Under the pieces are notes generated by a model. The model was not told the DNA's origin. It ran no database searches and saw only the letters and a list, made by a program, of their open reading frames with translations. This document shows, one piece after another, positions 55,877 to 57,469 of a stretch of DNA of 64,000 bases. Each line of letters opens with the position of its first letter. The first letter of the stretch is position 1. The translations under genes were made by a program, and so were the position numbers. Source of the stretch: Octopus bimaculoides (Eukaryota); assembly GCF_001194135.2 (NCBI RefSeq), contig NC_068985.1, forward strand, positions 79,454,360-79,518,359, in the 5' to 3' direction.

Positions 55877-56298
55877 NNNNNNNNNNNNNNNNNNNNNNNN
55901 NNNNNNNNNNNNNNNNNNNNNNNNNNNNNNNNNNNNNNNNNNNNNNNNNNNNNNNNNNNNNNNNNNNNNNNNNNNNNNNNNNNNNNNNNNNNNNNNNNNN
56001 NNNNNNNNNNNNNNNNNNNNNNNNNNNNNNNNNNNNNNNNNNNNNNNNNNNNNNNNNNNNNNNNNNNNNNNNNNNNNNNNNNNNNNNNNNNNNNNNNNNN
56101 NNNNNNNNNNNNNNNNNNNNNNNNNNNNNNNNNNNNNNNNNNNNNNNNNNNTATAATTTATATAAGGGCATTACTATATAGTAATGCCTCACGCTTAGAG
56201 GGACTTAATAAGTCAAAACTGCCAAAAAATAAGCACATATTTACCGAAAACGAGGGAATGCAACTTTCAAAGTTAACCTCCTGAAAACATTTAACTTA

Positions 56299-56374
56299 AC
56301 GGCAAACCACTGGTTTCATAATTAATACAGCAAAACTATGTAGTAAGCTGCATCTTTTATTCATCAGTGCACGT
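56299..56374 (-). ncRNA. Type I hammerhead ribozyme (inverted copy)
   Basis: Reverse complement acgtgcactgatgaataaaagatgcagc...gctgtattaattatgaaaccagtggtttgccgt, identical in core and stems to 56871-56946. Confidence 0.7.
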
Positions 56375-56870
56375 ATGGTTGAGACACATAAAGAATAAAC
56401 AAAAATCAACATACCCTGATTTGGTAGTTTTGACTTATTAAGTCCCTCTGAGCGTGAGACATTACTATATAGTAATGCCCTTATATAAATTATATATATA
56501 TATGGGGATAAAACGATGGGTTTTTTTTCCTTATGGGGTTTTTCACGCTGACTACTTGATAAATTCTTATAAAGATTTTATCCTATATGATATTATAAAT
56601 AATTAGAATATATTCAGTGCTGAATATTATTCTGTAAAAGNNNNNNNNNNTACTTGATAAATTCTTATAAAGATTTTATCCTATATGATATTATAAATAA
56701 TTAGAATATATTCAGTGCTGAATATTATTCTGTAAAAGCACGTGTTACCGAGATGCAACTTGAAAAAGCCCGCCTCTTTCACGGATATATAAGGGTGAAC
56801 ATAAGTCATCGTACTGTGTTGGGTACATCAGGGTATGTTGATTTTTGTTTATTCTTTATGTCTCGACTAT

Positions 56871-56946
56871 ACGTGCACTGATGAATAAAAGATGCAGCTT
56901 ACTACATAGTTTTGCTGTATTAATTATGAAACCAGTGGTTTGCCGT
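56871..56946 (+). ncRNA. Type I hammerhead ribozyme (candidate)
   Basis: Stem I acgtgca/tgccgt (6 bp, 1 bulge); CTGATGA 56878-56884; stem II ATAA/TTAT plus gatgcagc/gctgtatt; GAAAC 56928-56932; stem III ACC-agt-GGT; triplet GUU, cut after 56940. Confidence 0.7.
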
Positions 56947-57469
56947 CAAGTTAAATGTTTTTAGGAGGTTAACTTTGAAAGTTGCATTCTCTCGCTTTCG
57001 GTAAATATGTGCTTATTTTTTGGTAGTTTTGACTTATTAAGTCCCTCTAAGCGTGAGGCATTACTATATAGTAATGCCCTTATATAAATTATATATATTT
57101 ATGGGAAAAAAACGATCGTTTTTTTCCTTATGGGGTTTTTTCACGCTGACTACTTGATAAATTCTTNNNNNNNNNNNNNNNNNNNNNNNNNNNNNNNNNN
57201 NNNNNNNNNNNNNNNNNNNNNNNNNNNNNNNNNNNNNNNNNNNNNNNNNNNNNNNNNNNNNNNNNNNNNNNNNNNNNNNNNNNNNNNNNNNNNNNNNNNN
57301 NNNNNNNNNNNNNNNNNNNNNNNNNNNNNNNNNNNNNNNNNNNNNNNNNNNNNNNNNNNNNNNNNNNNNNNNNNNNNNNNNNNNNNNNNNNNNNNNNNNN
57401 NNNNNNNNNNNNNNNNNNNNNNNNNNNNNNNNNNNNNNNNNNNNNNNNNNCATACGTACGTACGTACAT

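What the first reader, a model, noticed from the sequence alone, without database searches (positions are those of the whole stretch)
56152..57166. 500-nt tandem non-coding unit with a complete type I hammerhead ribozyme: candidate retrozyme/circular-RNA replicon
Seen: a unit with 500-nt period (56651 vs 57151) has no recognisable ORF but contains CUGAUGA (56878), a long stem II (4 bp, 2x2 loop, 8 bp), GAAAC (56928), stem III ACC-agu-GGU, a GUU triplet and a closing stem I acgugca/ugccgu. The same motif lies on the minus strand at 56299-56374. Established: tandem 170-400-nt units with type I hammerheads (non-LTR retrozymes, related to PLE pLTRs) give self-cleaved monomers and circRNAs in several animals. 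Inference: this is such a family, with a longer unit and an unusually extended stem II. Caveats: A10.1-U11.1 replaces the usual G-C pair, GUU is a weaker triplet, and only ~1.3 direct units are visible between gaps.
Basis: partly seen in the sequence, partly recalled or inferred. Interest (0 to 1): 0.85.

Follow-up and report, generated by a model that had tools for sequence, protein, structure and literature searches.

The report
Hammerhead-like tandem repeat, probable retrozyme
A 500-base non-coding repeat in an animal genome carries a complete but atypical hammerhead self-cleaving RNA motif and is arranged like insertions made by Penelope-type retroelements, so it is probably one more family of the known "retrozyme" small circular-RNA elements, though cleavage is unproven.

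Summary
The 10-N gap is an unmerged 88-nt contig overlap. Once it is collapsed, the unit is 501 nt, 32.7% GC, with no ORF longer than 71 aa.

A relaxed type I hammerhead descriptor finds only the two local copies (+ 56871-56946, - 56299-56374). Shuffles give 0.03 hits per window, or about 3e-4 per unit.

Three new observations fit a retrozyme:
- The + strand, which carries the motif, folds far better than shuffles (z -6.95). It has 24 G·U pairs and no A·C mismatches. One 35-bp hairpin exists only on the + strand.
- The layout is a partial tandem joined head-to-head to an inverted, 5'-truncated copy, as in Penelope-like element (PLE) insertions.
- A real PLE 3' end with a textbook minimal hammerhead lies 5.6 kb away.

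Four points count against it:
- A10.1-U11.1 replaces the conserved G-C pair.
- The Rfam hammerhead models do not detect the motif.
- The two motif copies are identical, so there is no covariation to test.
- No other copy turned up in any collection.

Verdict: probably a new member of the known non-LTR retrozyme / hammerhead-satellite kind. Catalysis and copy number are untested. A 500-nt unit is within the known range.

The parts
56152..56420 (-). Inverted, 5'-truncated partial copy. It is the reverse complement of unit positions 310-501 followed by 1-75, so it crosses a head-to-tail unit junction. It runs into the left gap.
   Evidence: 94-96% identity to 56827-57093; 7 substitutions and 1 indel in 267 aligned nt.
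56299..56374 (-). Second copy of the hammerhead-like motif, identical to the + strand copy over 76 nt.
56420..57018 (+). One full direct unit. It is 501 nt once the artefactual 98 positions 56553-56650 are removed. The head-to-head junction with the inverted copy is at 56420.
56553..56650 (.). Assembly artefact: an 88-nt perfect duplicate of 56651-56738 plus a 10-N gap, i.e. an unmerged contig overlap.
56782..56865 (+). 35-bp hairpin with 7 G·U pairs that exists only on the + strand. It lies immediately 5' of helix I. The inverted copy's truncation point coincides with its apical loop.
   Evidence: -35.7 kcal/mol, z -7.59; minus strand -7.2 kcal/mol, z -0.25; pair list.
56871..56946 (+). Type I hammerhead-like motif:
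- helix I 5' strand 56871-56877
- C3-A9 at 56878-56884
- helix II 56885-56927
- G12-A14 at 56928-56930
- helix III 56931-56939
- U17 at 56940, with predicted cleavage between 56940 and 56941
- helix I 3' strand 56941-56946
- a 4-bp closing stem 56865-56868/56949-56952 beyond a 2x2 internal loop
57019..57166 (+). Start of the next direct unit, 94% identical to 56420-56568. It runs into the right gap.
57057..57078 (.). 22-nt perfect palindrome GGCATTACTATATAGTAATGCC, present once per unit (also at 56167-56188 and 56458-56479), followed by a short TA-rich tract.
   Evidence: family D3 and pair I4.

Best explanation
The locus is a fragment of a non-autonomous, non-coding retroelement of the non-LTR retrozyme type. 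It is a roughly 500-nt unit inserted as a more-than-unit-length tandem, with an adjacent inverted 5'-truncated copy.

Proposed mechanism (inferred except where marked):
1. The + strand is transcribed as an oligomer.
2. The type I hammerhead in each unit cuts after U17 (56940). It may act as a double hammerhead through its quasi-palindromic helix III (ACCAGUGGU).
3. The 500-nt monomers are ligated into circles.
4. The circles adopt a compact, G·U-rich fold. In that fold the helix ACUG/CAGU hides C3-G5 and keeps the ribozyme off.
5. A Penelope-like RT/GIY-YIG enzyme copies the circular or multimeric RNA into tandem cDNA. It primes on both target strands, which yields the head-to-head inverted copy.

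Shown here: the motif, the unit, the layout, the strand-specific predicted RNA structure, and the presence of a PLE with its own hammerhead in the same window.

Inferred: transcription, cleavage, circularisation, and mobilisation by a PLE.
For: - Complete core and type I topology, 0.03 chance hits per window.
- Helix sizes match the canonical metazoan pattern described in PMC4209133 (helix I 6 bp, helix II 4 bp, then loops, short helix III with a small palindromic loop). Here helix I is 6 bp with a 2x2 loop and a closing stem, helix II is 4 bp followed by an AA/AA loop, and helix III is 3 bp with a 3-nt loop.
- Helices I and II form in the minimum-energy fold of the whole circular unit.
- Unit features expected of retrozymes: no ORF and 32.7% GC. 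The circular + strand folds at -143 kcal/mol against -101±6 for shuffles (z -6.95, 69% paired), while the minus strand gives z -4.41.
- 24 G·U pairs and no A·C mismatches on the + strand, against 5 G·U on the minus strand. The 35-bp hairpin is present only on the + strand. The structure is therefore at the RNA level and has the same polarity as the motif.
- The layout (partial tandem plus an adjacent inverted 5'-truncated copy, both arms crossing a unit junction) is the one described for PLE insertions (PMC8557442). Hammerheads on opposite strands 100-700 bp apart are reported for PLE-derived copies (PMC4209133).
- A 5'-truncated PLE lies 5.6 kb away. Its GIY-YIG ORF has homologues that carry RVT_1 plus a C-terminal GIY-YIG domain. 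Its minimal hammerhead gave no chance hit in 1000 shuffles.
- A self-duplex through helix III is possible.
Against: - A10.1-U11.1 replaces the G10.1-C11.1 pair that PMC4209133 lists as highly conserved. GUU is an uncommon cleavage triplet (my own knowledge).
- No Rfam hammerhead model reports the motif, even when only 94 nt are searched at E up to 10. The same models also miss the clear PLE minimal hammerhead, so this is weak evidence.
- The hammerhead fold is 4.2 kcal/mol less stable than the local minimum-energy fold, and helix III has 6% ensemble probability.
- The two motif copies are identical, so nothing can be said about covariation. Having zero of 8 differences fall in the motif has P=0.069.
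- Only 1.3 direct units are assembled.
- No other copy was found in the window, in the metagenome, viral or prokaryote DNA scans, or among ORFs of the protein collection.
- There is no sequence similarity to the one PLE in the window.
Confidence: 0.55

Rival explanations
1. An ordinary non-coding tandem/inverted repeat (a satellite or a decayed retroelement fragment) whose hammerhead-like motif is either a chance match in a hairpin-rich sequence or a dead relic. It does not self-cleave and makes no circular RNA.
For: - A10.1-U11.1 and GUU.
- Rfam models do not detect the motif.
- The competing ACUG/CAGU helix is favoured.
- No covariation data, and no further copies anywhere.
- In a sequence this self-complementary, helices come cheaply, so shuffles understate the chance rate.
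- A scan of many windows at 0.03 hits per window will produce false positives.
Against: - About 3e-4 chance hits are expected inside the unit.
- The helix sizes are canonical.
- The motif lies on the strand with RNA-specific structure.
- The layout is PLE-like, and a PLE with its own hammerhead is nearby.
Confidence: 0.3
2. A hairpin-RNA locus. The unit would matter as a source of small RNAs (miRNA-, siRNA- or piRNA-like) from the 35-bp + strand hairpin and from convergent inverted copies. The hammerhead-like motif would be incidental.
For: - Hairpin 56782-56865 has z -7.59 on the + strand only.
- Weak miRNA-family matches there (mir-2763, 18.8 bits, E 0.95, far below the gathering score of 50).
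- Inverted copies could form double-stranded RNA.
Against: - The Rfam matches are at chance level.
- The whole 501-nt unit is structured, not only the hairpin.
- This reading does not explain the tandem organisation or the complete ribozyme core.
Confidence: 0.08
3. An assembly artefact. A dispersed short repeat would have been mis-joined by a short-read assembler into an apparent tandem and inversion on a roughly 1-kb contig island between gaps.
For: - The island is bounded by gaps of 275 and 284 N, and it contains an unmerged 88-nt overlap.
- PMC8557442 notes that such structures trouble short-read assemblies.
Against: - The three copies of unit segment 1-75 and the two copies of 310-501 differ by 4-6%, so they are distinct genomic copies.
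- The unit junction 501|1 is seen twice independently (57018/57019 and 56226/56227).
- The two sides of the inversion junction at 56420 share only 1 nt, so it is not a shared-k-mer chimera.
Confidence: 0.07

Closest known systems
Non-LTR retrozymes of metazoans (Cervera & de la Peña 2020, PMC7229834; Li et al. 2026 preprint, 10.64898/2026.07.22.740005)
   Same: - Type I hammerhead once per unit.
- Non-coding head-to-tail repeats.
- Low GC.
- Highly self-paired predicted circular RNA.
- Coexistence with PLEs.
- Unit length within the reported 51-972 bp.
   Different: - A10.1-U11.1 instead of G-C.
- Helix II continues beyond an internal loop into an 8-bp extension with a 15-nt loop, instead of ending in a small loop 2.
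- Only 1.3 units plus an inverted copy are seen.
- Copy number, expression and cleavage are unknown.
pDo500 satellite DNA of Dolichopoda cave crickets (PMC2837043)
   Same: About 500-bp tandem unit with a hammerhead. Compensatory changes at positions 10.1/11.1 are reported within that family. A double-hammerhead mode has been proposed for it.
   Different: pDo500 is a high-copy satellite (about 5% of the genome) with demonstrated self-cleavage. No sequence relationship to it was tested or is expected here.
Minimal hammerheads in pLTRs of Penelope-like elements (Cervera & de la Peña 2014, PMC4209133; Craig et al. 2021, PMC8557442)
   Same: - Larger than usual helix II.
- Palindromic helix III and loop 3.
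- Partial tandem plus an inverted 5'-truncated copy.
- Motifs on opposite strands a few hundred bp apart.
   Different: - No RT-EN ORF between the repeats.
- No extra nucleotide between A9 and 10.1.
- No G10.1-C11.1.
- A real 3-bp helix III is present.
- No similarity to the PLE 3' end at 62553-62830.
Newt satellite 2 and Schistosoma Sm-alpha hammerhead repeats (as summarised in PMC6155905)
   Same: A type I hammerhead in a tandem repeat of a few hundred bp, with a weak helix III that favours dimeric cleavage.
   Different: Those ribozymes have canonical G10.1-C11.1 and loop-loop contacts, and their activity has been shown.

Membership tests
Hammerhead ribozyme, type I | Conserved core C3 U4 G5 A6 N7 G8 A9 / G12 A13 A14 / A15.1-U16.1 / H17 | tested here: met
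   56878-56884 CUGAUGA, 56928-56930 GAA, A56931-U56939, U56940.
Hammerhead ribozyme, type I | Three helices around the core, with helix I open-ended | tested here: met
   Helix I is 6 bp with one bulged U, helix II is 4 + 8 bp, and helix III is 3 bp with a 3-nt loop. Helices I and II form in the whole-unit minimum-energy fold. Helix III does not.
Hammerhead ribozyme, type I | G10.1-C11.1 base pair | tested here: not met
   A56885-U56927 in both copies. No alternative register gives G-C.
Hammerhead ribozyme, type I | Match to the Rfam hammerhead covariance models | tested here: not met
   No hammerhead family at gathering score or at E up to 10 on 1015 nt or 94 nt. As a control, the clear PLE minimal hammerhead at 62746-62790 is missed too.
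Hammerhead ribozyme, type I | Core conserved and helices kept by covariation across copies | tested here: inconclusive
   Only two copies, identical over 76 nt. P=0.069 that none of 8 differences falls in the motif.
Hammerhead ribozyme, type I | Site-specific self-cleavage; loop 1-loop 2 tertiary contacts | not testable with these tools
   Needs transcription assays or structure probing.
Non-LTR retrozyme | Head-to-tail tandem repeats of a short non-coding unit | tested here: met
   Period of 500-501 nt. The unit junction is seen at 57018/57019 and, inverted, at 56226/56227. The longest frame is 71 aa. Only 1.3 direct units are assembled.
Non-LTR retrozyme | Low GC and a highly self-paired predicted circular RNA | tested here: met
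   32.7% GC. z -6.95 with 69% of bases paired.
Non-LTR retrozyme | Multiple copies in the genome | not testable with these tools
   No eukaryotic genome collection is available. No other copy in the window and none in the available DNA and protein collections.
Non-LTR retrozyme | Expressed as linear and circular monomer RNA | not testable with these tools
   No transcriptome data.
Non-LTR retrozyme | Coexistence with hammerhead-bearing PLEs | tested here: met
   GIY-YIG ORF at 62184-62549 whose homologues carry RVT_1 plus GIY-YIG. Minimal hammerhead at 62746-62790.
Non-LTR retrozyme | Sequence similarity to a PLE pLTR | tested here: not met
   No blastn match (word size 7, E up to 10) between the unit and 62553-62830. 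Only one PLE was available for comparison.
PLE pLTR minimal hammerhead | Extra nucleotide between A9 and 10.1; helix III absent or only 15.2-16.2 | tested here: not met
   Helix II starts directly after A9, and a 3-bp helix III is present.
PLE pLTR minimal hammerhead | Partial tandem with an adjacent inverted 5'-truncated copy | tested here: met
   Head-to-head junction at 56420. The criterion is taken from PMC8557442.
PLE pLTR minimal hammerhead | Repeats flank an RT-EN ORF | tested here: not met
   The repeat period is 500 nt with no ORF.

The most novel reading that the evidence does not exclude
The motif is an active hammerhead of an undescribed structural subtype. It would have A10.1-U11.1 at the base of helix II, and an AA/AA internal loop plus an 8-bp extension in place of loop 2. 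It would drive a 500-nt circular RNA whose G·U-rich, + strand-only structure records replication or editing at the RNA level.
Probability: 0.25. Interest if true: 0.55.

Novelty: new member of a known kind. Interest (0 to 1): 0.4.

Why it matters
If the motif is active, the locus adds a retrozyme family with an unusual helix II and a non-canonical 10.1-11.1 pair. That would be useful for defining which natural hammerhead variants still cleave, and for improving descriptors and covariance models that currently miss such variants. The same Rfam models also miss the clear PLE hammerhead in this window. The locus also shows, in one small stretch, the tandem-plus-inverted insertion signature that links retrozymes to Penelope-like elements. 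If the motif is inactive, this is an ordinary repeat.

Tried and rejected
- Rfam at gathering score and at E up to 10 on the window, the locus and 94 nt: no hammerhead family. The weak snoZ223, miRNA and other matches are at chance level. The C/D snoRNA reading is rejected because there is no D box and the base before UGAUGA is C.
- Search for other copies:
  - blastn of the unit against the window found only TA-microsatellite noise.
  - Exact-pattern scans of the metagenome, viral and prokaryote collections gave one 21-nt chance match (L001) and otherwise nothing.
  - Exact look-ups of unit ORFs found nothing.
  - Protein-collection searches with a 58-aa frame, and with seven further unit frames joined together, found nothing.
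- Identifying the organism failed. Exact look-ups of two retroelement ORFs found nothing. A word-index search with the GIY-YIG ORF found nothing. The run accession of the related Logan contig L002 appears in no paper. The organism remains unknown. Canonical EN+ PLEs point to an animal (PMC8557442).
- The PLE relative L002 has a decayed hammerhead (G12 lost, helix II broken), so it gave no covariation test.
- Coding TE: rejected, because there is no ORF and no Pfam-type signal in the unit.
- Shared-k-mer assembly chimera at the inversion: rejected, because the two sides of the junction share only 1 nt.

Full report
**Observation**

- CUGAUGA at 56878-56884.
- A 43-nt helix II arm: 4 bp, an AA/AA loop, then 8 bp.
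- GAAA at 56928.
- Helix III ACC-AGU-GGU at 56931-56939.
- U17 at 56940.
- Helix I ACGUGCA/UGCCGU with one bulged U.
- A reverse-complement copy at 56299-56374.

**The gap**

The 88 nt before the 10-N gap equal the 88 nt after it. The gap is therefore an unmerged contig overlap. Removing those 98 positions gives a 501-nt unit. That matches the 500-nt period measured to the right of the gap (56651 vs 57151). Extra whole units could still be hidden at this point and in the flanking gaps.

**Layout**

- 56152-56420 is the reverse complement of unit positions 310-501 followed by 1-75.
- 56420-57018 is a full direct unit.
- 57019-57166 is the first 148 nt of the next unit.

Identities among these pieces are 94-96%. 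They are distinct genomic copies, and the head-to-tail junction is seen twice. The inverted and direct arms meet head-to-head at 56420. Their 5' ends face each other and they share only 1 nt, which argues against a shared-k-mer chimera.

**Is the motif more than chance?**

A relaxed type I descriptor finds only these two copies in the window. It gives 0.0325 hits per dinucleotide-shuffled window, or about 3e-4 for one unit on both strands. Shuffles destroy the unit's high self-complementarity, so this figure is somewhat optimistic. A scan of many windows would still collect false positives.

**What the motif looks like**

- Helix I is 6 bp. It is followed by a 2x2 internal loop and a 4-bp closing stem.
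- Helix II is 4 bp. It is followed by an AA/AA internal loop and an 8-bp extension.
- Helix III is 3 bp with a 3-nt loop. The 9-nt segment ACCAGUGGU is as palindromic as an odd length allows.

These sizes match the canonical metazoan pattern given in PMC4209133: helix I 6 bp, helix II 4 bp, and a short helix III with a small palindromic loop.

In the minimum-energy fold of the whole circular unit, helices I and II form. Helix III is replaced by ACUG/CAGU (56877-56880 with 56933-56936), which sequesters C3-G5. Locally, the hammerhead fold is -13.7 kcal/mol against -17.9 for the minimum-energy fold, and helix III has 6% ensemble probability. A weak helix III and dimeric action are known for newt and PLE hammerheads (PMC6155905, PMC4209133), so this is not disqualifying.

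**Weaknesses of the motif**

- A10.1-U11.1 replaces G10.1-C11.1. PMC4209133 lists that pair among the features that mark genuine motifs. Compensatory changes at these positions are nevertheless reported in the cricket pDo500 family (PMC2837043).
- No Rfam hammerhead model reports the motif at any threshold. The same models also miss the clear PLE minimal hammerhead found in this window, so this negative carries little weight.
- The two copies are identical over 76 nt. The 267 aligned nt carry 7 substitutions and 1 indel, three of them directly flanking the motif. The probability that none of the 8 differences falls in the motif is 0.069. This is suggestive at best, and there is no covariation to test.

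**The unit as an RNA**

- The unit is 32.7% GC, and its longest frame is 71 aa.
- As a circle, the + strand folds at -143 kcal/mol against -101±6 for shuffles (z -6.95, 69% paired). The minus strand gives z -4.41.
- The + strand fold has 24 G·U pairs and no A·C 1x1 mismatches. The minus strand fold has 5 G·U pairs.
- The hairpin at 56782-56865 has 35 bp including 7 G·U. It folds at -35.7 kcal/mol (z -7.59) on the + strand. Its complement manages only -7.2 kcal/mol (z -0.25).

Neutral decay of a DNA palindrome should give G·U and A·C in similar numbers. The asymmetry therefore points to selection, or directional change, acting on + strand RNA. That is the polarity that carries the motif. It fits the 'highly self-paired circRNA' trait of retrozymes (PMC7229834).

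**Context**

- The window is a TE-rich, gap-ridden stretch at 36.8% GC. LINE-type RT fragments lie at 53999-54433 and 42595-43017.
- On the + strand, the ORF at 62184-62549 is a GIY-YIG domain. Pfam scores it just under its cutoff (20.2 bits against 22.6). An exhaustive search found 275 homologues. The long ones carry RVT_1 followed by a C-terminal GIY-YIG domain, which is the PLE architecture.
- About 200 nt after its stop codon lies a textbook PLE minimal hammerhead (62746-62790):
  - GUUGAAC, UUGACAA, A, GACAG-ACUUA-CUGUC, GAAA, UAU, C, GUUUAAC.
  - It has the U3-A8 core variant, the extra nucleotide after A9, G10.1-C11.1, a palindromic 15.2-16.2, and a 7-bp helix I.
  - A descriptor for this form gave no hit in 1000 shuffles.
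- The genome therefore holds hammerhead-bearing PLEs, the proposed mobilisers of retrozymes (PMC7229834; 10.64898/2026.07.22.740005).
- PLE insertions are described as partial tandems with an adjacent inverted 5'-truncated copy (PMC8557442). PLE-derived hammerheads are found on opposite strands 100-700 bp apart (PMC4209133). The finding has exactly this layout.
- The unit shows no sequence similarity to this particular PLE's 3' end.

**Searches for relatives**

All searches failed: window blastn, pattern scans of the three DNA collections, exact ORF look-ups, and protein searches with the unit's frames. None of these collections is a eukaryotic genome collection, so copy number remains unknown.

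**Interpretation**

The best reading (0.55) is a non-autonomous retrozyme-like element with a divergent type I hammerhead, inserted by PLE-type machinery from a more-than-unit-length or circular RNA template.

The main rival (0.30) is an ordinary repeat whose motif is a chance match or a relic. Smaller rivals are a hairpin/small-RNA locus (0.08) and an assembly artefact (0.07).

**Comparison with known systems and novelty**

The kind is known and widespread in invertebrates. Reported units span 51-972 bp, and a 500-bp hammerhead satellite has been known since 2000 (Rojas et al. 2000, as cited in PMC2837043). The 500-nt unit is therefore not unusual. What is unusual is the A-U 10.1/11.1 pair and the extended helix II. 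I rate this a new member of a known kind, at moderate interest, pending a genome-wide census and a cleavage assay.

Noticed in passing
window 62184-62830 (+): 5'-truncated Penelope-like element. It has a GIY-YIG endonuclease ORF at 62184-62549, a PLE-type minimal hammerhead (U3-A8 core variant) at 62746-62790, and a trinucleotide microsatellite from about 62836. Rfam does not detect this hammerhead.
   Followed up: yes
L002 1140-1190 (Logan contig SRR11869391_586633): A relative of that PLE (65% aa identity in the EN domain). It has a homologous 3' region, but its hammerhead is decayed: GAAA has become AAAA and helix II is broken.
   Followed up: partly
window 53999-55845 (+): LINE-type (non-LTR) retrotransposon ORF fragments. 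They include RVT_1 (E 2.9e-9) and a C-terminal tail, and they end about 30 nt before the gap that precedes the finding. Whether its 3' end is related to the repeat cannot be seen. A second RT fragment lies at 42595-43017.
   Followed up: partly
window 56420 vs 56827: The inverted copy is truncated exactly at the 3' side of the apical loop of the 35-bp hairpin 56782-56865. This could be a template jump at the hairpin or a coincidence.
   Followed up: no
window 56167-56188, 56458-56479, 57057-57078: A perfect 22-nt palindrome GGCATTACTATATAGTAATGCC occurs once per unit and is followed by a TA-rich tract. Its role is unknown.
   Followed up: no
window, whole: 22 assembly gaps, mostly next to (TA)n, (CA)n or trinucleotide microsatellites. 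The other 10-N gap (53405-53414) is not flanked by a duplicate, unlike the one at 56641.
   Followed up: partly
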